Shown: positions 1,597 to 62,247 of the stretch, in pieces
Numbering within the stretch: the stretch's first letter is position 1
Layout: each line of letters begins with the position of its first letter
Origin: Octopus sinensis
Taxonomy: Eukaryota
Length of the DNA: 64,000 bases
Direction: 5' to 3'
Assembly (NCBI RefSeq): GCF_006345805.1
Contig: NC_043010.1
Span: forward strand, 5,952,001-6,016,000
The notes under the pieces: model-generated
The model's database searches: none
Told to the model about the DNA's origin: nothing
What the model saw: only the letters and a program-made list of their open reading frames with translations
Position numbers and translations under genes: made by a program

Positions 1597-1830
1597 CAAC
1601 AGTTGTCAGTTGTTTGTTCTGTTGTTGCTGTGCTGTTTCAGTGTTCTGATAACAAAGTTGTAGTAGTAGCAGAAGTTTGGTAAGTGATAGTGTTATACAG
1701 TTCTATGGAGTTGGTTGTGTAGTGTGTAATGTGTGTTGTAGCCAATGACAAGCTGTCTTTTATTCCAATGCAAGGAAACGGAAATACAGCCTCCAACTTT
1801 TGCAGTTAATGATGGGCTGACTCACATACA
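1597..1830 (-). promoter_or_regulatory. Conserved promoter/non-coding leader exon of a further Pcdh unit left of the window
   Basis: Copy of the block found upstream of every gene: TGACTCA 1818-1824, CCAAT 1742-1746, donor TTG|GTAAGT at 1597/1596. Confidence 0.65.
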
Positions 1831-13322: not shown

Positions 13323-13565
13323 CATCAGTTGTTAGTTGTTTGTACTGGTGCAACTGCTCTATTTGAGTGTTCTGATTACAAAGTTATAGTAGCAGCAGCA
13401 GTTCTGAGTAGGTTGGTACGTGATAGTGCTATATAGCTCTATGAAGTTGGTCGTTAGTTAGTACGTCATGTTTGTTGTAGCCAATGACAAGCTGTCTATT
13501 AGTCCAATGCAAGGGAATGGAAATACAGCCTCCAGTTCTTGCAGTTAATAATGGTCTGACTCACA
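13323..13565 (-). promoter_or_regulatory. Promoter/leader exon of G1
   Basis: Conserved block: TGACTCA 13557-13563, GCCAATGACAAGCTGTC, donor GTAAGT at 13322; matching acceptor at 11252/11251. Confidence 0.7.
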
Positions 13566-14514
13566 GACTAGTTCACTTTCACCACATGCACATGTGTATG
13601 TATGTGTGTTAGAAGAATGTACACAAATGAATAAGGAAGAAAAGTTTAATATTCGGAATGGAGAGGATAGGCAATAAATTCAATATGGAAAATATCATTT
13701 CTCAATAATTATAGCATATTTTTTTTTTAAATCTGAGAAAACTGGTTTTAAAGACTAAGGTGTTACCCAATCTAAAACAGTTTTTTTTTTAATAAAATGA
13801 GTATAGAATATGTTCCTTTAAAAATAAAATTCATAAGTAGTTTAAAGCAATATTATAAAATAGCTACAAAATTATGTCAAGAAACTTTTGAAAAGGCGGT
13901 GCTCCAGCATGGCCACAGTCAAAAGGCGGTGCTCCAGCATGGCCAAGTAAAAGAGTGGCTATCAATAAACAAATGTGTGCTCAATTGGAATGTGGGAAAC
14001 AGAAATGTGGAAAACCCACTATTGCTCTTTTGAAATTAAAACTGCAATTTAATAGATTTTGTTAGAATAAACAATAATAACGAAGAATTTCCTAATGAAA
14101 AGAACAGAACTATTAGAAAACAACTAACTTGTACAAGTGCTAACTACTGCAGTGGAATATGGATTAAATCTCTGATTTCAAGAAAAACATTAACATTTAG
14201 TATTCTGGGAAAATGTTGACTGAGAATATACAATATTACAAGAATATGATTGTAAGGTTTGAGAAGATTACAATTCCAAGCAGGAGATATACAGAAACAT
14301 TAGAATATTGGACGAAATGTCTGCATAATTTAGTCAAGATTATTTTACACTGAGTTCAAATTGCAATGTGGTTATCTTTAACATAACATTGGTAGAAAAG
14401 ATGAAATGCAAAATAGAGATCAAAAAATATAGTTGATTTAACCTCTAGCAGACAGTGGTAGGGGGAAACAATTCTAGAGTAAATGCAGAATGCTAAAGGT
14501 TAATGTTCCTTTAA

Positions 14515-24031: not shown

Positions 24032-24270
24032 CAACAGGTATTAGTTATTTATATAGTTGTTGCTGTGCTGTTTCAGGGTTTTGGTAACAAAGTTATATCA
24101 GTAGCAGAAGTTCTGAGTAGTTTGGTATGTGACAGTGTTATGTAGTTCTATGGAGTTGGTTGTGTAGTATGTAATGTGTGTTGTAGCCAATGACAAGCTG
24201 TCTTTTATTCCAATGCAAGGAAACGGAAATACAGCCTCCAACTTTTGCAGTTAATGATGGGCTGACTCAC
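24032..24270 (-). promoter_or_regulatory. Promoter/leader exon of G2
   Basis: Conserved block; donor at 24031; acceptor ttacag before 22220. Confidence 0.7.
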
Positions 24271-25339
24271 AGACTGGTTTACTTAACCCACACCCACTTA
24301 CATATACATGTGAATGTGTGTTAGTACATAAATGAATAAGGAAGAAATGTCTAATGATTAGAATGAAGTGGACAGGCAATAAATTCAGTATGGAAAATAT
24401 TTCTAAATAAGGATGATATATATGAGTAAAATTATGGGAAATATGTCTAACTTTAGTAAATTTATCATACAAATTGTACTTAACTTTAAAAAAGTCATGA
24501 TGTAACCAAAGTAAAATTAATTGGTATAAAAAATAGATTTATGTAAATATTATGTTAACATAATAAAATTCCAGCGACAGTATGGAGAAAAACTTTTTAG
24601 AAAATACGAAACTGTGGCTATCAATAAACTAATAGTTGTTTGCTGGAAATCTCTGTAGCAGAGGATTAAAGGAATGCAGAATGGGAGAATGCGCATAAAG
24701 AATGATACTTTAAAAGTTGCATAATCACATTGGTGCATTTGTTAAATTAAATCAGCAGACTTCATTTTCAATTTGATAGCTTTTCTCAAAATAAAAAAAT
24801 AATATCCAAGAATTTCATAAAGAACAGAAGAATAAGGAGTTTCTAACAGATATAAATGGTACAAACTATTGCAGTAAAATATAGAATAAATCTCAGATCT
24901 TGTAACAGGACAGTAACAGCTAGGATTCTTCGAAAACGTAAATTCATAGCATAATAAAATACAAATTAAAAACTTCATGAGGTTTTCTATTTGAGGAATG
25001 GATTAGCAAAAATGTTAGAATGTTGAATAAAATGTTTGCTGTGTTTAGTTACAAACTATTATGCACTGTGCTGAAATTGCTATGAGGTTAACTTTATTTT
25101 ATCAATGCCAGACGAGATTAAATATAAGACAAGCAATGGGGTTGCTTTAATGTTATATTAAGTCTAAAATAGAAAATGAAAACTAATGGAAACTAAAACT
25201 GAAACATTAATGATCAGTGTTTTACTATAACAAGAAATATTGCTAAATCATTAATATTTTCCATTAATGTATTCCTTACTGGAAATGTATTGCCTGTCTT
25301 GAGAAAATAATGCTTTGTTATGTTCTTGAAATTATGCTA

Positions 25340-35553: not shown

Positions 35554-35792
35554 CAACAGTTGTCAGTGGTTTATATAGTTGTTGCTGTGCTGTTTCAGGG
35601 TTTTGGTAACAAAGTTATATCAGTAGCAGAAGTTCTGAGTAGTTTGGTATGTGACAGTGTTATGTAGTTCTATGGAGTTGGTTGTGTAGTATGTAATGTG
35701 TGTTGTAGCCAATGACAAGCTGTCTTTTATTCCAGTGCAAGGAAACGGAAATACAGCCTCCAACTTTTGCAGTTAATGATGGGCTGACTCAC
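35554..35792 (-). promoter_or_regulatory. Promoter/leader exon of G3
   Basis: Conserved block; donor at 35553; acceptor before 31498. Confidence 0.7.
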
Positions 35793-36605
35793 AGACTGGT
35801 TTACTTAACCCACACCCACTTACATATACATGTGAATGTGTGTTAGTACATAAATGAATAAGGAAGAAATGTCTAATGATTAGAAGGAAGTGGACAGGCA
35901 ATAAATTCAGTATGGAAAATATTGATTCAAAATAATGTTAATATAAATGTGTAAAAGTATAAGGAACCTAACTTTAGTAACTTTATGTTACAAACTGCAC
36001 ATAACTCTCAGAAAAGTTATGATGGAACCAAGATAACATTAATTCACATAAAAAATTAATATTTGGAAATATTATATTAATACAATAAAACAGCAGTGGA
36101 GTCAAAAAAGAAAATATTTTAGAAAATACGAAACTATGGCTATCAATAAACTTATTTATGTTCAGTAGAAATGTGTGAAGTAGAACACTGAAGAACAGCA
36201 GAATAAGAGAATGAGCAGAAGGAATGATATTTACCAAACCTTTTGCATTTGTTAGGTTAAAGGGGTTTACTTCATTTTGGATTTCATAGATTTCCTCAGA
36301 ATTAATAAATAATAATATTGAAGAATTTCATGAAGAACAGAAGTAGAAGGCAACTACTAATAGATATAACTTCTACAAACTACCATAGTAAAATATTCTG
36401 TAAATCTCAGATTTTCTAACAAAACATTAACATCTTGGAGCCTTCAAAGTGAACACTGATAGCATTACAGAATATAAATATAAGATTATTAAGATTTTGC
36501 TATTTCAGAAATGGATTTGCAGAGAAGTTAGGATGTTGTATAAAATGTTTGCTGTATTTAGTTACAAATTATTATGCACTGTGCTAAAATTGCTCTGAGA
36601 TTAGA

Positions 36606-36857: not shown

Positions 36858-39800
36858 TTAGACGTCTGTTGCAGACAGGGGAGGAAGTGGAGGTACCTGG
36901 GGTGATGAAGGTACCTTTGGTAGTGTTGTTATTTTGGGTACAGCTGGCAGAGATGGTTTACAGTCTGAAGTAAACTGACTTTTCACTGGTACTGTAGAAT
37001 GTTGTCCAGTTATGTTAGATGTGGTCCCAGTAATAGTCAAAGGTGTTTGGTCAAACGAACAGGAAGTGTTATTATCGACATTAGGTTGATGGTGATATCC
37101 ATATTTGTTATCTCCCCTTGATCTGTTGAGTGTGTTTTGAAGTTGATTTCTTCTATTCCATGTCTGGTCACTTTGGTAACGGCACAGATCTAAAAATATC
37201 GAGATTTTATATAAATTTACTTTCCAATGAAAAATTAAACTCTTTAAAATTTCTTTCTTGCATAAAACTATTCTCCATCTGTGCAGGTTTGCTTGCAAAT
37301 TTTTAATTTCTAAGAAACAACTTGATAATTTATTGATAATGAAGAAGATAATTAAATTCAGATGGTTCTCATATTAACATTCTCATTTTTGATTATGGAT
37401 CAGTCTTGAGAAGGAATTTTGCAAGAAAAATATATTTTAAATTTTATACAATCAGTATCTTAACCCCTATTTCTGAAAGTGTTACAAATGGACAATAATC
37501 ATTAATTTGAAATTAAATCATAGTCCTTTTTATTTGGAGACTGGTGGAATGAAAGCTCCCTTGTTTGAAAAGCATTCAATGGATTAGTTACAGAAAGAGT
37601 CTCTATGTGTAAAGCACTGCCTTAATATCCTACTCATCTGACTCATGCTATCATAAGAAAAATGAACGTAAAAGGAATGAACAAACTAAATTAAATATAT
37701 GTATTACACTTTCGTTAGGAAATATGATATTTAATTTAAAAGTTTCTTACATCTGAAGAAATGCTTAGTATTTTTAACTTACCTGGTAGTTCCTCATAAT
37801 GTCCAGCACTACCGACACTCCAGCCATGACCACTATCAGTGTGAGATGACAATGTTGACATCTCACTAAATTGGTCAGGATTGTTCAGTTCTCTGTAACC
37901 TGGAGACATACTTTCTTCTCTGGGAATAAACATCTATAAATATAGATCCAATGGATCGTCATAATGTTCTGGACATTAAAAAAAAAGAAATATATCTCAA
38001 AGATTTAGACAATTCTAAGGAATTTTAATCATTGTATACTCTAAGTTCTAAACTTTCTGAAGTCTACAAGTAATTTCCTAGAAAGATGACCTCAAAACAT
38101 TAGTCGGAATATATATAGGTAATTTTTAGTATATTTTATTTACTCTGTCTCCAGGATATCTTCATCATCGCCATCTCAGAGTGCTATGACTTATGAGTTT
38201 ATAATATACAAAGAAGCTTCAATTAGTAAGAAAGAATCATATATTAAGTAATTTAGTCACCCCAGTAAACTGGGGATATGAAGAATAACAAGCAGAGTAA
38301 ATAATTCAATATGAAAACAGCAGTCGAGTTCCAAACTAACTTTTCAAATTGTATATGATAGATCATCAATATTACCCCAGTAACATAGGAAAACTATTCT
38401 ACAGATGAAAATAGCAGACCTGTTTTATTCATGTCTAATGCTGACTGCAATTGTACAGATAAAATTTACAATTGTCTAAAATACTGTGTATATAACATTC
38501 CTCCAACCACAAAGATTGCACGTGTCAATAAATATTTGTTACTTCTCAATTTCCTTTGCAGCATTCAGATGAAGTTTTTCTAGGAATAACCAAAATTGAA
38601 AAGAATGCAAAAATACATTTGGAAAAGATTGATGAACAATAAAGGGAATGATTTGAATGTAAAATAGTGAGAGTGGTCATCATCATCTTTGAACATCAGT
38701 TCTCGATGCTGACATGGGATGGAGAGTAGGACAGGAGTTAGCTAGCCTGAGGGTTGTCCATGCTTCATCTCCCTATTTTTCTATAGTTTCTATGAAGGGA
38801 TGCACTTCATAACACCAACCACATAACACAGTGGCCCCAACATGGGAACTTTTATGTGGAACCTCTATGGGCAATTTTACATGGCACCTGCAAAGGTGTA
38901 TTTACATGGTTGCAAAATGTTTGCTCTGAAATATATATAAAGCAATTATATTTCATGTAGCAACACAAAAACAAATGAAATATGCAACAACCCTTTTTTT
39001 TCTTGATATTTCAAATAAATATAAGCAATTTACCTGTTCAGGTCTGTTCAAAGTAAAATCATTCCACTTATCACATGGCATGGTTCTGCAGTAAGTATCT
39101 TCCCTATAAACCTTTGATTCTTGAGATGGCTTCAGTTTTCTCGACATCGTGTACTGAACTCCAGGAGGAACACAGGTAGGATCAAATATATATTTTGATT
39201 GGATGTTTAATGCAGGTGTAACCTTGTGGTACATATCAACACTGTTGTTATGGTTGCCGTCTGTCTGCTTCAACCTATGAACTATACAGATCGATATAGA
39301 GATCACTATGACAACTGATACGATCACAGCTGCTACAACAATAACAATCATCACATTCAATTGGAGACCATTACTTGATTCTGTTGTTGTCTTTGAAGGG
39401 GTCTTAAATATCTTTGATGTGCTGTTACTAACTGTTAGAGTCAAAGACAAAGTTGTTGTCGACGACAGAACTGGACTGCCACTGTCTTTCACACCTAATT
39501 CCAGTTCATAGAATCCAGCATCATTTTGGTAAAGTGAGCGAGAGAAAGATAAGACACCAGAGTGATGGTTCATTTGAAATAAGTGTTTCTCATTACCTCT
39601 GAGTATTTCATATGTGAGGAAGGCATTGTGTTGACTGTCTCTGTCAGAGGCCCTAACAACTGTGATATCATGGTCAGAGTGGGGATGGTAGTGGACATTA
39701 AGAGTGAAAGGGTCAACATTAGGGAAACTGAAATAGGGAGCATTATCATTTAAATCCATAACCTCAACAACAACATTTGCTCTCTTCTCCAGTGATGGTG

Positions 39801-41421
39801 TTCCTTTATCTTTTACTAAAACCTTAAACTCATACAAGTTCTTTTCTTCTCTGTCTAGGGACTCAGTTGTGGAAATGAATCCCACATCAGATATCTGAAA
39901 TGGTAGAATATCTTTTCCATTAGATAATAGAGAATAGGTTAATTGTCCTCCATCTCCAATATCTGGGTCTGTGGCATTGACATATCCAACAGGTAAGTCT
40001 TTGTGTTCATTTTCATAGGTGAGAAACTTAAATATGTCCTGACTAAACTGAGGTTGTACATCATTTATGTCAGTAACCACCACAGAAAACCGTTTCTCTA
40101 CTTTCAATGGAGGTAAACCATTATCTTGACATTTAATGGTGAAATTAAAGCTCTTCTCTCTCTCTCTATCTATTTCACTCTTGACAACAACTTTGTATTT
40201 CTTTTCAGACATTGAAATAAGCTGAAGATATCTGTTTTGTAAATGACATTTCACTTGTCCATTTGCTCCACTGTCATTGTCAATAACTTTGACAAAAGCA
40301 ACAAAACTATGAATTTGAGCTGCTTCTGAGATGAAAGCTGTTTTTCCAGTTGACTTAACAAAAAATTTGAAGTCAATGTTTGGTGGATTATTCAAATGAG
40401 TGACACCATTTACCAGAACAGTGGCAGCTGAGGACATTGGTGGGTTACCATTATCCCTAGCTTCAACAAACAATTTATATATCCTTCCAAATTGAAATTC
40501 TTTCTTTAAAAACAAATATCCAGTTACTTCATCTAATCTGAAAAACTGTTCAGTATATTTTGATGTTATGGCATTGAAAAAATAAGATATTAATCCATTT
40601 TCTCCTTCATCTAAATCTGTGGCTGACAGCTTTGCAATCGGTTTGTTTAACTGGTGTGTGTCATTTACAGTGATATTATAATTCTTCTCAGAGAACAAAG
40701 GTTTATTGTCATTTATATCCTTAACTAATATTTTAATACGAAGTACACCTTTTTTCTGTGGTGACCCATTATCTCTGGCAATTAGCTGAATTTCATAAAT
40801 GCTTTTTGTCTCACGATCTAAGACATTTTCAAGGTTTAGTTGCAACAAATCAGATCCATCCAACTCTTTAGAAACAATCAATTTAAAAGGAGTATTTAAA
40901 TCTTCAATCTCATAAGTGATTCTGGAATTCTGAATATTGACATCATTATCAATGGCATTTGGAATTATATACTTCGTTCCTATTGAATCATTTTCATCAA
41001 ATTTTAAGTGAAATTCCTTTTTTGGAAACTTGGGAGAATTATCATTAACATCTTCTATTATAACTTTGATTTCTAATATCTTAATAACAGAATAGCCATG
41101 TTGAACAGTTATTTCTAATATTCTGAAACATTCTACATTAAATTGACACAGAATTTCTGCATCCAATATGGCAGCAGTGTACAAGTGTCCTCCCTGTGTA
41201 ACATTAAATAACGGAGCTGCTCCATTTGTACTTCCCTGAACAACATTAAATGTCAGTTTGCTGTTATCGTCAAGAGATGGTACAGTATCCAATAAGTGTG
41301 TATCAATGACAATATCTCCAATGAAGCTGTGTATATCATTGTTCTCTTTCACATGGTAGGTATGATCCACACACCAACAATTGTTAACCATTAACAACAC
41401 CAACGAAAGTATGTATAACAT
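36858..41421 (-). CDS. Pcdh: Protocadherin G4, join(complement 39034..41421, 37783..37933, 36858..37189), 956 aa
   Basis: Six EC repeats and TM; GT-AG sites at positions equivalent to the paralogs; 2388+151+332 in frame. Confidence 0.93.
38675..38910 (-). mobile_element. Old reverse-oriented copy of the (GAT)n retroposon shared by units 4, 5 (47472-47712) and 6 (55371-55526)
   Basis: CATCATCATC tail, CATGCTGACATGGGATGG and CTAACACCAACCAC motifs just downstream of the large-exon donor; truncated in G6. Confidence 0.55.
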
Positions 41422-42227
41422 GGTTACAGTCTACAATTCTGTTACAAGGAAATATATGTAAAATGTTGTTGAAACCTAAGAAATAATGACTTCTTGAATA
41501 TTTTCTTCTGTTATCACCTGTAAACATATGAAACAAAAATTTATTTATGCATTAATAAACCAGAAAATTCACATCACTGAACACTGACAGTAATGAAAAA
41601 AAATTGTACCAACATTTTACAAGTTATGACAAAAAATCTACATTATCATTCCATTCTTTATCACTATATGCATTTGATAGAATTTTCAACTTATTTTCCT
41701 CCTACAGATTTAAGTTATATTTTTGTGTGCAAAAATATTATATCAATTGTATAATCTCTTATTCTTTGTAACAAACATTTCTTAAATTTTCATCATTTCA
41801 AGAACCTAATTTATACTTCAAATAAAAGAAGGAAGCATTAACATATGTTTGACTGGTCTACATCTGCTAATTTATCTTAAATTCTCATTTTGTGTACTAA
41901 GAAAGGAAGCCTACACTGACAATTAATGAACCTTTCCCAAATATCAGTCAAATCTCCCCCAAATCACAAACTATCATAATATTTAAAAAGGGGACATATT
42001 GGATAACATATTGAATACTATATATCAAAGTACAGCATGACACAAGAAAAAAAAGATATGATTATTATGGTTAGAACTGCCTCTGATTATTGATCTATCC
42101 AATTGCAAACAACATGAGATTTAAATTTTGTTTGGCAGTCAAGTAATATATAATATATAATTATGTTTCTATACATTATCCACAATCAAGTCTGATTAAT
42201 AAATGATAAATGTATTTTTCAGCAATA

Positions 42228-43484
42228 TTAGGTTGTCAAGAAAGTTCTTGCAGTTTTTAACCTTTAAATTCAGTTGCACAAATCTCAGCTTAAACAGAAC
42301 TTTATTAATCAAAATAAACACCATCAGAATCAACACACTTTTGCCAACACGAAACAAGTTTATTTATGCCAGTAGCATAAAAATCCTGCATTCTGGTAGC
42401 AATGAAGTCGTTGAGGGTGTGTTTGGCATCATCTTGGTTTTTGAAGAATTTCTGACACAGGATGTTGTTGAGATGCTTGAATAAGTGGTAGTCGGTTGGC
42501 AAGAGGTCTGGTGACTATGGCATATGAGGCTGTGTTTCGTAACCCAATTCGTTCAACTTCTGCAGGGTCAGTTGTGCGACGTGTAGTTGAGTGTTGTCGT
42601 GGAGAAGAATTGGTAATTTTCTATTGACCAATGCTGGCTGTTGTTGTCGGAGTTTCTTATGCATTTCATCTATTTACAGACAGAACTTCTCTGCCATAAT
42701 GGTTTCGCCTGGATCCAAAAAGGCGTGATGGATTACAATGGCCGCAGACCACCATGACCTTCTTTTGGTGCAACTTTGGCTTTGGGAAGTGCTGTGGAGC
42801 TTTGTCGGTGCCCAACCACTGAGCTGAGCATCACCGGTTGTTGTAAAGTATCCATTTTTCATCACAAGTCACAATCCAGTCGTTCTTGCTGTGTAAAAGA
42901 AGGGAAGACGACACTTTAAAATGGCATTTTTTTGGGTTGTCGTTCAATTCATGCGGCACCCATTTCTCAAGTAATATTTTTCTAATCTCTTTCAAGTGGT
43001 TGGAAATTGTCACATACGTTACGTCTAATTCAGAATCAAGTTCTCGAACAGTTGTGCGTGAATTGGCTTCCACTAAGGCTCTTAGTTGATCATTGTCAAC
43101 ATCCGATGGCTGACCACCATGCTTATCTTCAAGACTCTTGTCACCGCTACGAAATTTCTTGAACCACGATTGTGCTGTATGTTCATTAGTGGTTCCTGGG
43201 CCAAATGCATCGTTGATATCATGAGCTATTTCAGCAGCTTTTCGGCCTAGCTTGAACTGGAATAAGAAAATTGTGCGAATTTGCTTTTTGTCCATGTTGT
43301 ATGCAACGTTCTGGACAAAATGGTCTAATTATTCAATAAGAAAAAGAGTAACACGATTAGATAGAACGAAAAATGGGCTTTAAAATGACATATAAAGTCT
43401 TAGTAATTTAATGATATTTAATTTGAAAATATATCATTTAAAACCAAAATGTAAAATTCAGCAAGAACTTTCTTGACAACCTAA
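42228..43484 (-). mobile_element. Degenerate mariner transposon (Hsmar1/cecropia-like), 1257 bp
   Basis: 24-bp TIRs TTAGGTTGTCAAGAAAGTTCTTGC and TA duplications at 42226-42227 and 43485-43486. Transposase fragments: MDKKQIRTIFLFQFKLGRKAAE...WVPHEL...TCDEKW (42831-43295) and PTDYHLF (42305-42502). Frameshifted. Confidence 0.92.
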
Positions 43485-44356
43485 TACGTTCATAAATACA
43501 TTATGGTAAGCAGTAAGTTTTGTAGTCTGAAGAATATCCGGTTAAGCTTTTCAGCAATCTGCTGTAGATAGGGAACCTAAATTTTTGCTGTAAGATGCTA
43601 AGATCTTAATATTCTAAGGGGTTTCTTTTTTATCCTTTATTTCTTTTAGGAACTGGACTCCAGCTTTGCTGGGGTACTCCCTTGATACTTATAACACATT
43701 CACTCTTTTACAACATTAGTACTCCCCAACCGTTCTATTCCTAAAGCTATTAAGTTGCAGACTTTGAAAATGGTTCTCTTGCTTCATTGATAGGGTTCGT
43801 TTCTTAGATTCACAGTTACTGAGTCACAATCTGTAATTCACGATTTGATGCAAAGGAAGTAAAAGATAAAACTGACAGAACACTAATTAAATGAGTTGTT
43901 GCCCTTTGATTCTGGCCTAAAAATAACAACAAAAAAAAAATGTCTGCCTAACAATCTAAGCTGAAAAAATAATTTCCTTCATCACATCTCCCTTCTAATT
44001 ATCAATATTTAGCGTCATTCTCACATTAAACATTTGACAATCTAATCACAATTAAACATTCAGTAATCTTGCGATTCCTTGGAACAGAAAAATCAAAAAT
44101 TTTACAATTTAGTAAAATTATATCTTTCCTAAAATTTACCATTCTAGACGGTCTTTGAGAAATAATATTTATATTCTAGATTTGATGAATGGAAATCGTG
44201 ACAAGGTACAAATATCTGTGAAAAGTTCTAACATCAAGTAAACTTATTCTATTTCTACATCCTGTCTGTAACAATAGAATGAACTTTTGATTAAATAAAC
44301 CATTTGAAAAACATATAAAAGATTACACAACAGAATAAGTTCTAATAAGTACTTAC

Positions 44357-44595
44357 CAACAGTTGTCAGTGGTTTATATAGTTGTTGCTGTGCTGTTTCA
44401 GGGTTTTGGTAACAAAGTTATATCAGTAGCAGAAGTTCTGAGTAGTTTGGTATGTGACAGTGTTATGTAGTTCTATGGAGTTGGTTGTGTAGTATGTAAT
44501 GTGTGTTGTAGCCAATGACAAGCTGTCTTTTATTCCAGTGCAAGGAAACGGAAATACAGCCTCCAACTTTTGCAGTTAATGATGGGCTGACTCAC
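44357..44595 (-). promoter_or_regulatory. Promoter/leader exon of G4
   Basis: Conserved block; donor at 44356; acceptor before 41517. Confidence 0.7.
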
Positions 44596-45660
44596 AGACT
44601 GGTTTACTTAACCCACACCCACTTACGTATACATGTGAATGTGTGTTAGTACATAAATGAATAAGGAAGAAATGTCTAATGATTAGAATGAAGTGGACAG
44701 GCAATAAATTCAGTATGGAAAATATTGATTCAAAATAATGTTAACATAAATGTGTAAAAGTAAAAGGAACCTAACTTTAGTAACTTTATGTTACAAACTG
44801 CACATAACTCTCAGAAAAGTTATGATGGAACCAAGATAAAATTGATTCATATAAAAGATAAATATTTGGAAATATTATTATATTAATACAATAAAACAGC
44901 AGTGGAGTCAAAAAAGAAAATATTTTAGAAAATACGAAACTATGGCTATCAATAAACTTATTTATGTTCAGTAGAAACGTGTGAAGTAGAAAACTGAAGA
45001 ACAGCAGAATAAGAGAATGAGCAGAAGGAATGATATTTACCAAACCTTTTGCATTTGTTAGGTTAAAGGGGTATACTTCATTTTGGGTTATATAGATTTC
45101 CTCAGAATTAATAATAATAATATTGAAGAATTTCATGAAGAACAGAAGTGGAAGGCAACTACTAATAGATATAACTTCTACAAACTACCATAGTAAAATA
45201 TTCAGTAAATCTCAGATTTTGTAACAAAACATTAACATCTTGGAGCCTTCGAAGTGAACACTGATAGCATTACAGAATATAAATATAAGATTCTTAAGAT
45301 TTACTATTTCAGAAATGGATTTGCAGAGAAGTTAGGATGTTGTATAAAATGTTTGCTGTATTTAGTTACAAATTATTATGCACTGTGCTGAAATTGCTAT
45401 GAATTTAGATTTATTTTATCAATACAATAAATGAGATTAAATACTAACCAAATAATTGGGTTGATTTACTGTAAATTAAAAGCTAAAAACAGAATCTGAA
45501 AACTAACTGAAACTAATTAATGAAACATTATTGATGCGTGTTCTACTATGAAATGAAATATTGTTTTGTTATTAATATTTTCTTTTAATGTATTCCTTAC
45601 TGGAAACGTATTGCCTGTCTTGAGAAAATAATGCTTTGTTATGTTCTTGAAATTATGCTA

Positions 45661-52216: not shown

Positions 52217-52455
52217 CAACAGTTGTCAGTGGTTTATATAGTTGTTGCTGTGCTGTTTCAGGGTTTTGGTAACAAAGTTATATTACTAGCAGAAGTTCTG
52301 AGTAGTTTGGTATGTGACAGTGTTATGTAGTTCTATGGAGTTGGTTGTGTAGTATGTAATGTGTGTTGTAGCCAATGACAAGCTGTCTTTTATTCCAGTG
52401 CAAGGAAACGGAAATACAGCCTCCAACTTTTGCAGTTAATGATGGGCTGACTCAC
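52217..52455 (-). promoter_or_regulatory. Promoter/leader exon of G5
   Basis: Conserved block; donor at 52216; acceptor before 50314. Confidence 0.7.
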
Positions 52456-53521
52456 AGACTGGTTTACTTAACCCACACCCACTTACATATACATGTGAAT
52501 GTGTGTTAGTACATAAATGAATAAGGAAGAAATGTCTAATGATTAGAAGGAAGTGGACAGGCAATAAATTCAGTATGGAAAATATTGATTCAAAATAATG
52601 TTAATATAAATGTGTAAAAGTATAAGGAACCTAACTTTAGTAACTTTATGTTACAAACTGCACATAACTCTCAGAAAAGTTATCATGGAACCAAAATAAA
52701 ATTGATTCATATAAAAGATAAATATTTGGAAATATTATTATATTAATACAATAAAACAGCAGTGGAGTCACAAAGAAAACTTTTTAGAAAATACGAAACT
52801 ATGGCTATCAATGAACTTATTTATGTTCAGTAGAAATGTGTGAAGTAGAACACTGAAGAATAGCAGAATAAGAGAATGAGCAGAAAGAATGATATTTACC
52901 AAACCTTTTGCATTTGTTAGGTTAAAGGGGTTTACTTCATTTTGGATTTCATAGATTTCCTCAGAATTAATAATAATAATATTGAAGAATTTCGTGAAGA
53001 ACAGAAGTGGAAGGCAACTACTAATAGATATAACTTCTACAAACTACCGTAGTAAAATATTCTGTAAATCTCAGATTTTGTAACAAAACATTAACATCTT
53101 GGAGCCTTCAAAGTGAACACTGATAGCATTACAGAATATAAATATAAGATTCTTAAGATTTTGCTATTTCAGAAATGGATTTGCAGAGAAGTTAGGATGT
53201 TGTATAAAATGTTTGCTGTATTTAGTTACAAATTGTTATGCAATGTGCTAAAATTGCTCTGAGATTAGATTTATTTTATCAATACAATAAATGAGATTAA
53301 ATAGGAACCAAATAATTGGGTTGATTTACTGTAAATTAAAAGCTAAAAAACAGAATCTGAAACCAAACAGAAACTAATGAATGAAACATTATTGATGCGT
53401 GTTCTACTATCAAATGAAATATTGTTTTGTTATTAATATTTTCTTTTAATGTATTCCTTACTGGAAATGTATTGCCTGTCTTGAGAAAATAATGCTTTGT
53501 TATGTTCTTGAAATGATGCTA

Positions 53522-56500
53522 TTAGACGTCTGTTGCAGACAGAGGAGGAGGAAGTGGAGGTACCTGGGGTGATGAAGGTACCTTTGGTAGTGTTGTTATT
53601 TTGGGTACAGCTGGCAGAGATGGTTTACAGTCTGAAGTAAACTGACTTTTCACTGGTACTGTAGAATGTTGTCCAGTTATGTTAGATGTGGTCCCAGTAA
53701 TAGTCAAAGGTGTTTGGTCAATCGAACAGGAAGTGTTATTATCGACATTAGGTTGATGGTGATATCCATATTTGTTATCTCCCCTTGATCTGTTGAGTGT
53801 GTTTTGAAGTTGATTTCTTCTATTCCATGTTTGGTCACTTTGGTAACGGCACAGATCTAAAAACAATATTAAGATTTTATATAAATTTACTTTGCAATCA
53901 AAAATTAAGCATTTGTTTCATGCGTAAAATTATCCTAAATCTATGCAGGTTTACTCAAAACTTTGAATGTTTAATGAACAACTTGATAATTTATTGATAA
54001 TGAAGAATTTAATTAAATTCAGATGTTTTTCATTTTAACATTCTCATTTTTAATTAGGGATTAGTCTTGAGAAGGAGTTTTGGGAGAATAATATATGTGA
54101 ATAAATTTCACGAGAACATTATATATATTGAATATCTTGACCTATATCTTTTTAAAGATTTGCAAATGGACACTAATCATTAATTTATAATTAAATTTTA
54201 GTCGTGTATCTATGGAGATTGGTGGAATGAAAGCTTCCTAGCTTGAAAATTAATGAATGGGTGAACAACAGAAAGAGCCACGAGGTGTAAAGCATTGCCT
54301 TAATATTCTACTCATCTGATTCATGCTAACATACGCAAAATGAATGTAAAACGAATGAACAAACTAGATATGTATTATTATATCATTAGGAAATATAATA
54401 TTAAATTTAAAAGTTTCTTACATTTGAAGAAATTCTTGGCATTTTTATCTTACCTGGCAGTTCCTCATAATGTCCAGCACTACCAACACTCCAGCCATGA
54501 CCACTATCAGTGTGAGATGACAATGTTGACATCTCACTGAATTGGCCAGGATTGTTCAGTTCTCTGTAACCTGGAGACATACTTTCTTCTCTGGGAATGA
54601 ACATCTATAAATATAAGTCCAATGGATCATCATGATGTTCTGCACATTCAAAAGAAAAAATATACATCTCAAAGATTTAGACAATTCTTAGGATTCTTCA
54701 ATTGGGAGGTTAATTTCTAATCTTTCTATAGTCTAGATTCTAAACTTTCTGAAGTCTACAAGTAATTTCCTAGAAAGATGACTTCAAAACATCAGTCAGA
54801 ATATATATATATAAGTAATTTTTAGTATATTGTATTTACTCTGTCTCCAGGATATCTTCATCATTGCCATCTCAGAGTGCTATGACTTTTGAGTTTAAAA
54901 TATTCAAAGAAGCTTCAATTAGTAAGAAAGAATCATATATTAAGTAATTTAGTCACCCCAGTAAACTGAGGATATGAACAATAACAAGCAGAGTAAATAA
55001 TTCAATATGAAAACAGCAGTCGAGTTTCAAACTAACTTTTCAAATTGTATATGATAGTTTATTAGTATTACCGCAGTAACAGAGGAAAACTATTCTACAG
55101 ATGAAAATAGCAGACCTGTTTTATTCATGTCTAATGATGACTGCAATTGTACAGATAAGATTAGCAAGTGTTTAAAATACTGTGTATATAACATTCTTCC
55201 AACCATAAAGATTGCACGTGTCAATAAATATTTGTTACTTCTCAATTTCCTTTGCAGCATTCAGATGAAGTTTTTCTAGGAATAACCAATATTGAAAAGA
55301 ATGCAAAAATACATTTGGAAAAGATAGATGAACAATAAAGGGAATGGTTCAAATGTAAAATAGTGAGAGTGGTCATCATCATCTTTGAACATCAGTTCTC
55401 CATTCCGACATGGGATGGAGAGTAGGAGAGGAGTTAGCTAGCCTTAGAGCTGTCCATGCTTCATCTCTATTTTTCTATAGTTTCTATGAAGGGACGACCA
55501 TCCTAACACCAACCACTTAACACAGTTATATTTCATGCAGGAACACAAAAACAAATGAAGCATGCAACAGCCATTTTTTCCTTGATATTTCAAATAAATA
55601 TAAGCAATTTACCTGTTCAGGTCTGTTCAAAGTAAAATCATTCCACTTATCACATGGCATGGTTCTGCAGTAAGTATCTTCCCTATAAACCTTTGATTCT
55701 TGAGATGGCTTCAGTTTTCTCGACATTGTGTACGAAATGCCAGGTGGAACACAGGTAGGATCAAATATATATTTCGATTGCATGTTTAATGCAGGTGTAA
55801 CCTTGTGGTACATATCAACACTGTTGTTATAGTTGCTGTCTGTCTGCTTCAGTCTATGAACTATACAGATTGATATGGAGATCACTATGACAACTGATAC
55901 GATCACAGCTGCTACAACAATAACAATCATCACATTCAATTGGAGACCATTACTTGATTCTGTTGTTGTCTTTGAAGGGGTCTTAAATATCTTTGATGTG
56001 CTGTTACTAACTGTTAGAGTCAAAGACAAAGTTGTTGTCGATGACAGAACTGGACTGCCACTGTCTTTCACACCTAATTCCAGTTCATAGAATCCAGCAT
56101 CATTTTGGTAAAGTGAGCGAGAGAAAGATAAGACACCAGAGTGATGGTTCATTTGAAATAAGTGTTTCTCATTACCTCTGAGTATTTCATATGTGAGGAA
56201 GGCATTGTGTTGACTGTCTCTGTCAGAGGCCCTAACAACTGTGATATCATGGTCAGAGTGGGGATGGTAGTGGACATTAAGAGTGAAAGGGTCAACATTA
56301 GGGAAACTGAAATAGGGAGCATTATCATTTAAATCCATAACCTCAACAACAACATTTGCTCTCTTCTCCAGTGATGGTGTTCCTTTATCTTTTACTAAAA
56401 CCTTAAACTCATACAAGTTCTTTTCTTCTCTGTCTAGGGACTCAGTTGTGGAAATGAATCCCACATCAGATATCTGAAATGGTAGAATATCTTTTCCATT

Positions 56501-57999
56501 AGATAATAGAGAATAGGTTAATTGTCCTCCATCTCCAATATCTGGGTCTGTGGCATTGACATATCCAACAGGGAAGTCTTTGTGTTCATTTTCATAGGTG
56601 AGAAACTTAAATATGTCCTGACTAAACTGAGGTTGTACATCATTTATGTCAGTGACCAGCACAGAAAACCGTTTCTCTACTTTCAATGGAGGTAAACCAT
56701 TATCTTGACATTTAATGGTGAAATTAAAGCTCTTCTCACTCTCTCTATCTATTTCACTCTTGACAACAACTTTGTATTTCTTTTCAGACTCTGAGATAAG
56801 CTGAAGATATCTATTTTGTAAATGGCACTTCACTTGTCCATTTTCTCCATTGTCATTGTCAATGACATTCACAAAAGCAACAAAACTGTGAATTTGTGTT
56901 CCTTCAGAGATGACAGCTGTTTTTCCAGTTGACTTAACAAAAATTTGAAGTCAATGTTTGGTGGATTATTCAAATGAGTGACACCATTTACCAGAACAAT
57001 GGCAGCTGAGGACATTGGAGGGTTACCATTATCCCTAGCTTCAACATACAATTTATATATCCTTCCAAATTGAAATTCTTTCTTCAGAAACAAATATCCA
57101 GTTACTTCATCTAATCTGAAAAACTGTTCAGTATATTTTGATGTTATGGCATTGAAAAAATAAGATATTAATCCATTTTCTCCTTCATCTAAATCTGTGG
57201 CTGACAGCTTTGCAATCGGTTTGTTTAACTGGTGTGTGTCATTTACAGTGACATTATAATTCTTCTGAGAGAACAAAGGTTTATTGTCATTTATATCCTT
57301 CACTAATATTTTAATACGAAGTACACCTTTTTTCTGTGGTGATCCATTATCTCTGGCATTTAACTGAATTTCATAATTGCTTTTTGTCTCACGATCTAAG
57401 ACGTTTTCTAGATTGAGTTGCAATAGATCAGATCCATCCAAATATTTAGAAACAATCAATTTAAAAGGAGTATTTAAATCTTCAATCCCATAAGTGATTC
57501 TGGAATTCTGAATACTGACATCATTATCAATGGCATTTGGAATTATATACTTTTTTCCTATTAAATCATTTTCCTCAAATTTTAAATGAAATTCCTTTTT
57601 TGGAAACTTGGGAGAATTATCATTGACATCTTCTATTATAACTTTGAGTTTTAATATCTTAATAACAGAATAGCCATGTTGAACAGTTATTTCTAATATT
57701 CTGAAACATTCCACATTATATTGACACAGAATTTCTGCATCCAATATGGCAGCAGTGTACAAGTGTCCTCCCTGTGTAACATTAAATAACGGAGCTGCTC
57801 CATCTGTACTTCCCTGAACAACATTAAATGTCAGTTTGCTGTTATCGTCAAGAGATGGTACAGTATCCAATAGGTGTGTATCAGTGACAATATCTCCAAT
57901 AAAGCTGTGTATATCATTGTTCTCTTTCACATGGTAGGTATGATCCACACACCAACAATTGTTAACCATTAACAACACCAACAAAAATATGTATAACAT
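53522..57999 (-). pseudogene. Pcdh: Protocadherin G6 with a 1-bp frameshift at 56939-56943 (pseudogene, null allele or assembly indel); exons 55613..57999, 54454..54604, 53522..53856
   Basis: The large exon is 2387 bp versus 2388 in G3-G5. The A-run after GACTTAAC has 5 A here and 6 in G4 (40350-40355). The ORF track splits it into 56869..57999 and 55526..56872. Everything else, including splice sites, is intact. Confidence 0.8.
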
Positions 58000-60941: not shown

Positions 60942-61180
60942 CAACAGTTGTCAGTGGTTTATATAGTTGTTGCTGTGCTGTTTCAGGGTTTTGGTAACAA
61001 AGTTATATCAGTAGCAGAAGTTCTGAGTAGTTTGGTATGTGACAGTGTTATGTAGTTCTATGGAGTTGGTTGTGTAGTATGTAATGTGTGTTGTAGCCAA
61101 TGACAAGCTGTCTTTTATTCCAGTGCAAGGAAACGGAAATACAGCCTCCAACTTTTGCAGTTAATGATGGGCTGACTCAC
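60942..61180 (-). promoter_or_regulatory. Promoter/leader exon of G6
   Basis: Conserved block; donor at 60941; acceptor before 58091. Confidence 0.7.
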
Positions 61181-62247
61181 AGACTGGTTTACTTAACCCA
61201 CACCCACTTACATATATATATGTGAATGTTTGTTAGTACATAAATGAATAAGGAAGAAATGTCTAATGACTAGAATGAAGTGGACAGGCAATAAATTCAG
61301 TATGGAAAATATTGATTCAAAATAATGTTAATATAAATGTGTAAAAGTATAAGGAACCTAACTTTAGTAACTCTATGTTACAAACTGCACATAACTCTCA
61401 GAAAAGTTATCATGGAACCAAGATAAAATTAATTCATATAAAAAATAAATATTTGGAAATATTATTATATTAATACAATAAAACAGCAGTGGAGTCACAA
61501 AGAAAACTTTTTAGAAAATACGAAACTATGGCTATCAATGAACTTATTTATGTTCAGTAGAAATGTGTGAAGTAGAATACTGAAGAACAGCAGAATAAGA
61601 GAATGAGCAGAAAGAATGATATTTACCAAACCTTTTGCATTTGTTAGGTTAAAGGGGTTTACTTCATTTTGGATTTCATAGATTTCCTCAGAATTAATAA
61701 TAATAATATTGAAGAATTTCACAAAGAACAGAAGTGGAAGGCAACTACTAATAGATATAACTTCTACAAACTACCATAGTAAAATATTCTGTAAATCTCA
61801 GATTTTCTAGCAAAACATTAACATCTTGGAGCCTTCAAAGTGAACACTGATAGCATTACAGAATATAAATATAAGATTCTTAAGATTTACTATATCAGAA
61901 ATGGATTTGCAGAGAAGTTAGAATGTTGAATAAAATGATTGCTGTATTTAGGTACAAATTATTATGCACTGTGCTAAAATTGCTATGAGATTAGATTTAT
62001 TTTATCAATACAATAAATGAGATTAAATAGGAACCAAATAATTGGGTTGATTTACTGTAAATTAAAATCTAAAAAACAGAATCTGAAAACTAACAGAAAC
62101 TAATGAATGAAACATTATTGATGCGTGTTCTACTATGAAATGAAATATTGTTTTGTTATTAATATTTTCTTTTAATGTATTCCTTACTGAAATTGTATTG
62201 CCTGTCTTGAGAAAATAATGCTTTGTTATGTTCTTGAAATTATGCTA

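What the first reader, a model, noticed from the sequence alone, without database searches (positions are those of the whole stretch)
44357..44595. Per-gene promoter/leader cassette conserved in all seven units (possible promoter-choice element)
Seen: a ~237-bp block (TGACTCA ... CAGCCTCCAACTTTTGCAG ... GGAAACGGAAAT ... GCCAATGACAAGCTGTC ... TTG|GTAAGTACTTATT) recurs at 1597, 13323, 24032, 35554, 44357, 52217 and 60942. It stays conserved even in G1 and G2, whose surrounding introns have decayed. Donor-to-TGACTCA spacing is 237 bp in five copies. It lies 2-4 kb upstream of each ectodomain exon, whose acceptor is also conserved. Established: TGACTCA is the AP-1 site and CCAAT the NF-Y site; vertebrate clustered Pcdhs each carry a conserved promoter element used in stochastic promoter choice. 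Inference: an analogous octopus element, possibly activity-responsive. Caveat: on the minus strand the same bases read GTGAGT, so this could instead be a second splice donor.
Basis: partly seen in the sequence, partly recalled or inferred. Interest (0 to 1): 0.7.

Follow-up and report, generated by a model that had tools for sequence, protein, structure and literature searches.

The report
Octopus protocadherin promoter and leader exon
Each gene in this tandem array of octopus protocadherin genes carries its own copy of a deeply conserved 240-base non-coding module, most likely a promoter plus an untranslated first exon, which is the expected layout for duplicated genes but is unusually well conserved and apparently undescribed.

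Summary
The window is Octopus sinensis CM016872.1, with genes on the minus strand. The ~239-nt block occurs seven times, at exactly the stated coordinates.

Across O. vulgaris, O. bimaculoides and Argonauta hians, only the three coding exons and this block still align. The block has three parts:
- a sharp-edged, ungapped 100-nt core, 70/100 columns invariant in 18 copies and 88% identical to Argonauta, against ~80% for the main coding exon. It holds TGAGTCA, TTCCGTTTCC and an inverted CCAAT box at fixed spacing;
- an indel-rich, CA-rich, non-coding stretch;
- an invariant TTG|GTAAGTA splice donor, after which conservation stops.

Every ectodomain exon examined has an AG acceptor site 7-105 nt before its ATG. 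One deposited O. vulgaris gene model (CAI9732425.1) uses exactly the block-donor to ectodomain-acceptor intron.

The best reading is a proximal promoter plus untranslated exon 1, copied with each gene. The transcription start is not mapped.

The analogy to the vertebrate promoter-choice element (CSE) is only positional. There is no CGCT box or CTCF-like site, each unit has its own 3' exons, and two other protocadherin loci lack the element (one has an analogous block of its own). Stochastic choice and activity-responsiveness remain untested. This is ordinary in kind, useful as a handle, and apparently undescribed.

The parts
44357..44599 (-). Focal copy of the cassette (serves gene G4, ATG 41421): conserved core plus putative untranslated exon 1, up to its last exon base
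44500..44599 (-). 100-nt ungapped conserved core (putative proximal promoter), GTCTGTGAGTCAG...ATTGGCTACAACACACA
   Evidence: 70/100 columns invariant in 18 copies of 4 species; 87.8% identical to Argonauta, against 40% for the 50 nt upstream
44588..44594 (-). TGAGTCA heptamer (AP-1/TRE-type bZIP consensus; with its flanks GTGAGTCAGC it also fits the ARE/CNC-Maf pattern)
   Evidence: intact in 17/18 copies; TGACTCA in the L005 paralog; the motif naming is from general knowledge
44542..44553 (-). TTCCGTTTCCTT (tandem GGAA on the other strand; ETS- or IRF-like)
   Evidence: exact or within one mismatch in the block of 18 of the 19 copies listed (not in window G2, not in L005); the motif naming is from general knowledge
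44512..44516 (-). Inverted CCAAT box (ATTGG on the sense strand), inside the 13-mer CTTGTCATTGGCT
   Evidence: the 13-mer is invariant in all copies, including L005; fixed 78 nt downstream of TGAGTCA
44357..44499 (-). CA-rich, G-poor, indel-tolerant stretch: putative untranslated exon 1 (5' end not mapped); its last ~14 nt, CTGACAACTGTTG, are conserved
   Evidence: the homologous last 49 nt are an annotated exon in O. vulgaris
44350..44356 (-). 5' splice site GTAAGTA (intron 44356..41518, 2839 nt)
   Evidence: GGTAAGTA invariant in 18 copies, conservation ends after it; the homologous donor is used in model CAI9732425.1
41422..41517 (-). 5' untranslated part of exon 2 of G4, starting at the acceptor tgtttcatatgtttacag|GTGATAAC
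1597..1829 (-). Cassette copy 1 (old unit; its gene lies beyond the window start)
13323..13568 (-). Cassette copy 2 (serves G1, exon 2 starts 11251, ATG 11151; intron 2071 nt)
24032..24274 (-). Cassette copy 3 (serves G2, exon 2 starts 22220, ATG 22115)
35554..35796 (-). Cassette copy 4 (serves G3, exon 2 starts 31498, ATG 31399; intron 4055 nt)
52217..52459 (-). Cassette copy 6 (serves G5, exon 2 starts 50314, ATG 50232)
60942..61184 (-). Cassette copy 7 (serves the frameshifted G6, exon 2 starts 58091, ATG 57999)
36861..37190 (-). Last coding exon of G4. Its stop lies ~1.07 kb before the next cassette, with an AATAAA ~250 nt after the stop (context for the 3'-UTR rival)

Best explanation
The block is the proximal promoter plus the untranslated first exon of the protocadherin gene that lies 2-4 kb downstream of it on the minus strand.

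The 100-nt core is a fixed-spacing cluster of transcription-factor sites: a TGAGTCA bZIP site, an ATTAAC motif, TTCCGTTTCC, and an inverted CCAAT box with ideal NF-Y flanks. Transcription probably starts some tens of bases downstream of the ATTGG box (inferred, not mapped). That would give a short, CA-rich, unstructured leader with few upstream ATGs.

The leader ends at TTG|GTAAGTA and is spliced over a 1.8-4.1-kb intron to an acceptor 82-105 nt before the ATG of the large ectodomain exon. Tandem duplication copied the whole transcription unit, so every gene has its own copy. Purifying selection then kept the core and the donor while the introns and spacers decayed.

Each gene is therefore an autonomous unit under a shared, subfamily-specific regulatory logic.

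Shown: the anatomy, the conservation pattern, the non-coding nature, and the donor/acceptor pairing in one annotated model.
Inferred: promoter activity, the transcription start site, and which factors bind.
For: - The copies are in register and far beyond chance.
- Against O. bimaculoides and Argonauta hians only the three coding exons and this block align; O. vulgaris, the closest relative, also keeps some flanking stretches. The same holds between old and young units inside the window.
- In the 18-copy alignment conservation starts abruptly at AGTCTGTGAGTCAG. It runs ungapped for 100 nt, relaxes into an indel-rich stretch ((CTA)n expansions in Argonauta), rises again over the last ~20 nt, and stops right after GGTAAGTA.
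- Core identity to Argonauta is 87.8%, against 40% for the 50 nt upstream and 53% for the middle stretch. The main coding exon is ~80% identical.
- The TGAGTCA-to-ATTGG spacing is identical in all 18 copies, while the ATTGG-to-donor distance ranges from 149 to 194 nt.
- The block has stops in all six frames in nearly every copy, and its length (229-274 nt) varies by amounts that are not multiples of three.
- There is no Rfam match, and the block folds worse than shuffled sequence (z = +1.69).
- An AG acceptor site precedes the ATG by 7-105 nt in all 20 ectodomain exons examined. On a crude pyrimidine-tract score most are stronger than background (mean 10.9 of 15 against 8.2), a few are not, and no significance test was run. 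These exons therefore need an upstream exon.
- O. vulgaris model CAI9732425.1 has CDS exons L004 ..6921 | 8025-8073 | 9897-9931. The middle exon is the last 49 nt of the block, ending at the donor. The last exon starts at the acceptor 104 nt before the next gene's ATG. That annotation was built from Iso-Seq and RNA-seq through PASA and EVM (PMC10700109).
- A deep paralog in L005 keeps TGACTCA, CTTGTCATTGGCT and TTG|GTGAGTA while the sequence around them has diverged.
- A non-homologous block with the same layout (ATTGG, CA/CAG-rich leader, CAG|GTAAGT, ~1 kb after the previous stop and 2.9 kb before the next ATG) exists in another protocadherin subfamily.
Against: - No transcript, CAGE or chromatin data could be reached, so neither the start site nor promoter activity is shown.
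- The only transcript-type evidence is one gene model, and I could not inspect its read support. In that model the block exon is internal, entered from the upstream gene through an acceptor inside the block, not a first exon.
- A second model (XP_036365131.1, L005) also splices from an upstream gene into the core itself. At least there, part of the 'promoter' is annotated as transcribed.
- The block lies closer to the upstream gene's stop (0.6-2 kb) than to the downstream ATG.
- A TATAAA-like motif ~24 nt before the donor occurs in many copies. If functional, it would put a start site at the donor; it is absent from G1, G2 and one O. vulgaris copy.
- The motif assignments are consensus matches recalled from general knowledge, not tests.
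Confidence: 0.75

Rival explanations
1. The whole block is transcribed, with the start site at or upstream of its sharp 5' edge. On this reading the 100-nt core acts at the RNA level in the 5' UTR, for example in translation control or localisation, and is not a promoter.
For: The 5' edge of conservation is sharp and could be a transcription start. The L005 model places the part of the core that includes ATTGG inside an exon. The sense strand of the core has no ATG in the Octopus copies.
Against: A promoter has to exist somewhere, and nothing upstream of the block is conserved (40% identity). There is no stable or conserved fold (z = +1.69) and no Rfam family. The most conserved positions coincide with classical DNA-binding consensus sequences at fixed spacing. 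The Argonauta and L005 copies do carry an ATG in the core.
Confidence: 0.1
2. The block belongs to the upstream gene, as the end of its 3' UTR or as an alternative or internal 3' exon of read-through transcripts. It has no promoter role.
For: It lies 0.6-2 kb after the upstream stop codon. Two annotated upstream-gene models splice into it.
Against: The acceptors used by those models are copy-specific. One is an 8-nt insertion in L005. The other is a YAG that the five young window copies lack (TTACCAAAAC). The invariant feature is the donor, which leads into the downstream gene's exon 2. AATAAA is not conserved inside the block, while an AATAAA lies ~250 nt after the upstream stop, ~800 nt before the block. 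Every downstream ectodomain exon needs an upstream exon.
Confidence: 0.08
3. The core is an enhancer, silencer or boundary element between units, and the nearby GTAAGTA is incidental.
For: It is a cluster of factor-binding consensus sequences lying between genes.
Against: The donor is invariant across four species and retained as GTGAGTA in the deep paralog. Conservation ends exactly after it. It is used in an annotated model. There is no CTCF-like match.
Confidence: 0.04
4. The GTGAGT overlapping TGAGTCA is a second splice donor, for an exon that lies upstream of the block.
For: GTGAGT is intact in 17 of 18 copies.
Against: The exonic side (TCT|GTGAGT) fits the consensus poorly, and the sequence upstream is not conserved. 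L005 has GTGACT, which spoils a donor but keeps the TGACTCA palindrome. No model uses it.
Confidence: 0.03

Closest known systems
Vertebrate clustered-protocadherin variable-exon promoters with the conserved sequence element (CSE, a CTCF site; summarised in PMC7811963)
   Same: There is one conserved non-coding element per gene in a tandem protocadherin array. It is shared among paralogs, lies upstream of the large ectodomain exon, and is more conserved than its surroundings.
   Different: There is no sequence similarity: no CGCT box and no CTCF-like match. The octopus element is a ~100-nt core plus a separate untranslated exon, 2-4 kb and one intron away from the ATG, not ~200 bp upstream on the same exon. 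Each octopus unit has its own cytoplasmic exons. The element is restricted to a subfamily. Stochastic choice is untested.
Generic TATA-less RNA polymerase II promoters driven by an NF-Y CCAAT box, followed by an untranslated first exon
   Same: An inverted CCAAT box with RRCCAATSR flanks, accompanied by other factor sites at fixed spacing, then a short unstructured leader and a consensus donor. This is the simplest description of what is seen.
   Different: Neither the distance of the box from the start site nor NF-Y binding is known here. The degree of conservation (70/100 invariant columns across four species, above that of the coding sequence) is higher than usual.
Chelicerate shortened Dscam arrays, whose tandem 5' cassettes each have their own promoter (cited in PMC6339937)
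   Same: An invertebrate cell-recognition gene family diversified by tandem duplication, with one promoter per unit.
   Different: A different gene family. There the cassettes share downstream constant exons. Here whole genes are duplicated.
The analogous block in another O. sinensis protocadherin subfamily (L008 14257-14863 and 913-1545)
   Same: The same layout and position: ATTGG, a CA/CAG-rich leader and CAG|GTAAGT, ~1 kb after the previous stop and 2.9 kb before the next ATG.
   Different: No detectable homology to the block studied here. It has no TGAGTCA. Only two nearly identical copies were seen, so its own conservation carries no information yet.

Membership tests
Vertebrate Pcdh CSE / CTCF-bound promoter-choice element | One copy per variable (ectodomain) exon | tested here: met
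   One block per unit in the window and in loci L001-L004
Vertebrate Pcdh CSE / CTCF-bound promoter-choice element | CGCT box and CTCF-type core motif | tested here: not met
   No CGCT/AGCG in 16 of 19 copies. The best match to CCASYAGRKGGCRS has 3 or more mismatches, falling in the G-rich core. The consensus was recalled from memory.
Vertebrate Pcdh CSE / CTCF-bound promoter-choice element | Fixed short distance upstream of the ATG, on the same exon | tested here: not met
   1.9-4.2 kb from the ATG, separated from it by an intron of 1.8-4.1 kb
Vertebrate Pcdh CSE / CTCF-bound promoter-choice element | Variable exons spliced to shared constant exons | tested here: not met
   Each unit has its own exon 3 and exon 4. 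Read-through models exist in O. vulgaris, but they are exceptions.
Vertebrate Pcdh CSE / CTCF-bound promoter-choice element | Stochastic, mutually exclusive promoter use in single neurons | not testable with these tools
   Needs single-cell, isoform-resolved expression data
Untranslated first exon (5' leader) | Consensus 5' splice site, conserved, with conservation ending at it | tested here: met
   GGTAAGTA invariant in 18 copies; GTGAGTA in L005
Untranslated first exon (5' leader) | Acceptor upstream of the start codon of the next exon | tested here: met
   An AG acceptor site 7-105 nt before the ATG in all 20 exons examined. Mean pyrimidine-tract score 10.9 of 15 against a background of 8.2; the measure is crude, a few sites score at or below background, and no significance test was run.
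Untranslated first exon (5' leader) | The junction is seen in transcripts | tested here: inconclusive
   The intron is used in one deposited model (CAI9732425.1) from an annotation based on Iso-Seq and RNA-seq. I could not inspect the reads, and in that model the exon is internal.
Untranslated first exon (5' leader) | No coding potential | tested here: met
   Stops in all frames in nearly every copy; length differences not multiples of three
Untranslated first exon (5' leader) | A transcription start site inside or at the block | not testable with these tools
   No CAGE, 5'RACE or transcript contigs could be reached
NF-Y (CCAAT-box) promoter | CCAAT pentamer with RRCCAATSR flanks, conserved | tested here: met
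   AGCCAATGA on the plus strand; the 13-mer CTTGTCATTGGCT is invariant in all copies
NF-Y (CCAAT-box) promoter | Box at about -60 to -100 from the start site; NF-Y binding | not testable with these tools
   The start site is unknown and there are no binding data
AP-1/TRE (activity-responsive bZIP site) | TGA(C/G)TCA heptamer, conserved | tested here: met
   17/18 copies have TGAGTCA; L005 has TGACTCA; one copy has TGAGGCA
AP-1/TRE (activity-responsive bZIP site) | Fos/Jun binding and induction by neuronal activity | not testable with these tools
   The sequence fits ARE/CNC-Maf sites equally well (GTGAGTCAGC)
Structured non-coding RNA | Rfam match or a stable conserved fold | tested here: not met
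   No match at E <= 1; fold z = +1.69
Dispersed repeat / transposable element | Copies outside the per-gene position | tested here: not met
   nhmmer finds only the expected one copy per unit in ~330 kb of loci, plus one in L005

The most novel reading that the evidence does not exclude
The 100-nt core could be a subfamily-wide regulatory 'address' through which octopus neurons pick one or a few genes of the tandem array, either stochastically or in response to activity through the bZIP site. Read-through transcripts that enter the block's 49-nt mini-exon and continue into the next gene (as in CAI9732425.1) would then be a regulated cis-splicing route. Together these would amount to an independently evolved counterpart of vertebrate protocadherin promoter choice, built from bZIP, ETS-like and NF-Y sites instead of CTCF.
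Probability: 0.1. Interest if true: 0.8.

Novelty: new member of a known kind. Interest (0 to 1): 0.4.

Why it matters
Octopus protocadherins are the best-known invertebrate parallel to the vertebrate neuronal self-recognition code. I found no paper that describes how individual octopus genes are switched on.

This module gives a concrete, sequence-defined handle for that question:
- a ~100-nt core with invariant sites to mutate;
- a defined leader-to-ectodomain junction to count in RNA-seq;
- an expectation that each subfamily has its own version.

It also shows that annotation of these arrays should include an untranslated exon 1. That could help to undo the fused and truncated gene models seen here.

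In kind it is what tandem duplication of whole genes predicts, so it is useful but not surprising.

Tried and rejected
Searches for transcripts:
- An exact look-up of the 822-aa ORF product found nothing.
- A profile search with the N-termini, aimed at partial products from RNA-seq contigs, returned only short genomic models.
- The one Logan contig fetched (L007) is genomic: intron, acceptor, exon, donor.
- The gene ranges returned by the contig look-up cover only the CDS, so they say nothing about UTR exons.

Fused gene model:
- I tried to reconstruct how the 2898-aa fused model in the window joins genes G5, G4 and G3. Too many in-frame GT-AG paths exist, and none for G5 to G4 passes through the block, so I dropped it.

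Readings considered and rejected:
- Coding exon, rejected on stops and indels.
- Structured RNA, rejected.
- Polyadenylation signal inside the block, rejected because neither AATAAA in the core nor TATAAA near the donor is conserved.
- CTCF/CSE, rejected.
- Transposable element, rejected.

Tests that gave nothing:
- An array-edge test to decide whether the block belongs to the upstream or the downstream gene failed. The gene upstream of the first Argonauta block is also a protocadherin.
- A cuttlefish locus (L006) has no homolog of the block.
- I found no published divergence time for Argonauta and Octopus beyond a fossil lower bound of ~29 Ma. The unalignable flanks serve as the neutral control instead.

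Full report
**What the window is.** The window is 100% identical over 3,975 bases to part of a locus fetched from Octopus sinensis chromosome record CM016872.1 (GCA_006345805.1). That places it at about 5,952,001-6,016,000 of the record. All large ORFs are on the minus strand, and they encode protocadherins. The closest listed relative is XP-type 'protocadherin beta-2-like' of O. sinensis, at 91% identity.

Mapping a full-length relative onto the window shows that each gene has a large exon (signal peptide to transmembrane segment) and two small cytoplasmic exons of its own. The window holds seven repeat units of 8-11 kb: six large exons, one of them frameshifted, and seven last exons.

**The observation.** It is correct. 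The two long motifs each occur seven times, against at most 1-2 in 100 shuffles. The donor positions are exactly those listed, and the spacing is identical in five copies.

On the gene-sense (minus) strand the module reads:

GTCTGTGAGTCAGCCCATCATTAACTGCAAAAGTTGGAGGCTGTATTTCCGTTTCCTTGCACTGGAATAAAAGACAGCTTGTCATTGGCTACAACACACA ... (CA-rich, ~140 nt) ... CTGACAACTGTTG|GTAAGTACTTATT.

The five young units are ~97-98% identical over their whole length, so their agreement carries no information. The informative comparisons are with the two old units and with other species.

**Conservation.** Between young and old units in the window, only the exons and a 550-650-nt stretch around the block align.

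I fetched related loci from O. sinensis (L001), O. bimaculoides (L002), Argonauta hians (L003) and O. vulgaris (L004). When a whole unit is compared with O. bimaculoides and with Argonauta, exactly four things align: the three coding exons and this block, once per unit. O. vulgaris, the closest relative, also keeps some flanking stretches.

An alignment of 18 copies shows the anatomy:
- Conservation begins abruptly at AGTCTGTGAGTCAG.
- It runs without a single indel for 100 nt, to ATTGGCTACAACACACA.
- It then relaxes into a stretch with many indels, including (CTA)n expansions in Argonauta.
- It rises again over the last ~20 nt.
- It stops immediately after GGTAAGTA.

In the core 70 of 100 columns are invariant. 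O. sinensis against Argonauta is 87.8% identical in the core, 92.9% at the donor region, 53% in the middle and 40% in the 50 nt upstream. The main coding exon is ~80% identical. The distance from TGAGTCA to ATTGG is the same in all 18 copies, while ATTGG to the donor ranges from 149 to 194 nt.

The 13-mer CTTGTCATTGGCT is invariant everywhere. Conservation in a genus whose flanks are unalignable cannot come from gene conversion within one genome, so the core and the donor are under purifying selection.

**What it is not.**
- It is not coding. There are stops in all six frames in nearly every copy, and the lengths (229-274 nt) differ by amounts that are not multiples of three.
- It is not a known or evidently structured RNA. 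There is no Rfam match, and the sense strand folds worse than its shuffles.
- It is not a dispersed repeat. A profile of the block finds only the expected one copy per unit.
- It is not the vertebrate CSE. There is no CGCT box and no CTCF-like match.

**Evidence that the donor feeds the ectodomain exon.** All six large exons in the window have an acceptor (…ttacag|G) 82-105 nt before the ATG.

Every homologous exon in the other three species, and exons of three unrelated protocadherin loci, also has an AG acceptor site 7-105 nt before the ATG. On a crude pyrimidine-tract score most are stronger than background (mean 10.9 of 15 against 8.2), a few are not, and I ran no significance test. These exons therefore need an upstream exon, and the block is the only conserved candidate that carries a donor.

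The strongest single item is a deposited O. vulgaris gene model, CAI9732425.1 (P0016). It ends …IP|ENTETAQQQQNKQLTTV|GQSKGISPHNK*. Exhaustive GT-AG reconstruction gives one solution: CDS exons L004 …6921 | 8025-8073 | 9897-9931. The exon 8025-8073 is the last 49 nt of the block and ends at the TTG|GTAAGTA donor. Position 9897 is the first base after the tttttcag acceptor, 104 nt before the next gene's ATG.

That annotation was built from Iso-Seq and RNA-seq with PASA and EVM (PMC10700109). A C-terminus of this kind is unlikely to come from protein homology or ab initio prediction. I could not inspect the reads.

The caveat is that in this model the 49-nt exon is internal. It is entered from an internal donor in the upstream gene's last exon through an acceptor (TTATCAG|AAC). 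That acceptor is also present in G1 and G2 of the window but lost in the five young copies (TTACCAAAAC).

**Promoter or transcribed element?** No start-site data could be reached, so this step is inference. Four points argue for a promoter:
- A promoter must exist, and nothing else in the 3-5 kb between one gene's stop and the next gene's acceptor is conserved.
- The invariant positions coincide with classical DNA-site consensus sequences at fixed spacing. These are TGAGTCA (AP-1/TRE; with its flanks also ARE/CNC-Maf), TTCCGTTTCC (tandem GGAA, ETS- or IRF-like) and AGCCAATGA (the NF-Y consensus RRCCAATSR, inverted relative to transcription). The names come from general knowledge and are not tests.
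- The indel-tolerant, G-poor, unstructured stretch downstream looks like a 5' UTR.
- An NF-Y box usually lies 60-100 nt upstream of the start site. That would give a leader of roughly 60-100 nt.

Two points argue against, or complicate the picture. A second model, XP_036365131.1, splices from an upstream gene into the core of the L005 copy through an acceptor created by an 8-nt insertion. A TATAAA-like motif ~24 nt before the donor occurs in many but not all copies.

**How general is it?** A distant O. sinensis paralog locus (L005; its protein is 49% identical) holds a clear homolog (nhmmer E = 4.6e-16). It keeps TGACTCA, CTTGTCATTGGCT and TTG|GTGAGTA, so the module predates the split of these subfamilies.

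Two other protocadherin loci (L008 in O. sinensis, L009 in O. bimaculoides) and a cuttlefish locus (L006) have no homolog. L008 does carry its own block with the same layout and position. The architecture may therefore be general, but this particular core is specific to a subfamily.

**Comparison with the vertebrate system.** The resemblance is positional: one conserved element per gene in a tandem protocadherin array. It fails the sequence and layout features that define the CSE, as set out in the membership table. Each unit has its own cytoplasmic exons, so promoter choice is not needed to build a transcript. Whether neighbouring genes are chosen stochastically, or whether the bZIP site confers activity-dependence, cannot be judged from sequence.

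I found no paper describing an octopus protocadherin promoter or leader exon. Jiang et al. (PMC9795677) place 161 protocadherin genes on one O. sinensis chromosome, with expansions at ~65 and 8-14 Ma. That fits the old and young units seen here.

**Verdict.** The feature is real and selectively conserved. It is most likely (about 0.75) the proximal promoter plus untranslated exon 1 of each gene, copied with the gene by tandem duplication. It is ordinary in kind, unusually well conserved, apparently undescribed, and a practical entry point for studying how octopus protocadherin genes are regulated. The promoter-choice and activity-response ideas remain speculation.

Noticed in passing
window main exons, e.g. 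G4 about 40221..39322 (nt 1201-2100 of each large exon): The part of the large exon that encodes roughly cadherin repeats EC4-EC6 is 96-100% identical at the DNA level among G1-G5. The first 1200 nt are 69-97% identical and the introns of G1 and G2 are unalignable. The same protein stretch is near-identical in O. vulgaris and O. bimaculoides relatives. This looks like gene conversion or homogenisation, as described for vertebrate clustered protocadherins.
   Followed up: partly
L004 6921 / 8025-8073 / 9897-9931 (O. vulgaris); window equivalents at about 1645..1597 and 13371..13323: A 49-nt mini-exon inside the block (acceptor TTATCAG|AAC) links the upstream gene's last exon to the next gene's exon 2 in model CAI9732425.1. 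The acceptor is present in window copies G1 and G2 and in several O. bimaculoides and Argonauta copies, but is lost in the five young copies.
   Followed up: partly
P0006 = CAI9732431.1 (O. vulgaris, 1091 aa): This isoform carries the cytoplasmic exons of two successive genes in one product (…VPSIPQ|IFVPREESMSP…). It is a read-through that skips the next gene's leader and ectodomain exon.
   Followed up: no
window 57999..53522 (G6): The large exon of G6 is split by a frameshift into ORFs 56869-57999 and 55526-56872. It is annotated as two genes of 376 and 550 aa. This is either a pseudogene or an assembly error in a near-identical array.
   Followed up: partly
window from 50202 downwards (G5, G4, G3); also upstream of L001: The deposited annotation fuses neighbouring genes into single products of 2898 aa (three genes in the window) and 6653 aa (about seven genes just outside it). 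I could not reconstruct how they are joined.
   Followed up: partly
loci of P0018 and P0021 (L005), O. sinensis: Other protocadherin subfamilies have coding ranges of 279 kb and 39 kb for products of ~900 aa, with small 3' exons 20-30 kb or more away. This hints at distant, possibly shared, 3' exons. It is unlike the compact self-contained units in the window.
   Followed up: no
L008 14257-14863 and 913-1545 (O. sinensis, 60.5 Mb): A non-homologous but analogous intergenic block in another protocadherin subfamily: ATTGG, then ~300 nt of CA/CAG-rich sequence, then CAG|GTAAGT. Identity drops right after the donor.
   Followed up: partly
window 16200-17754: A ~1.5-kb minisatellite (periods 20/46/90, unit CTGGTGCCACATAAAA…) lies in the intron between G2's two small cytoplasmic exons. 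It accounts for much of that unit's extra length.
   Followed up: partly
window 18325-19071 (-): A 248-aa ORF in the same intron of G2 has no Pfam match and is probably spurious.
   Followed up: partly
L005 9510-9700; window plus-strand sites 8311, 11604, 14702, 22349: The recurrent GTGGTAAGTAGCTTGCTTACC… sequence looks like a tRNA-derived SINE. It produces donor-like GTAAGTA matches unrelated to the block.
   Followed up: no
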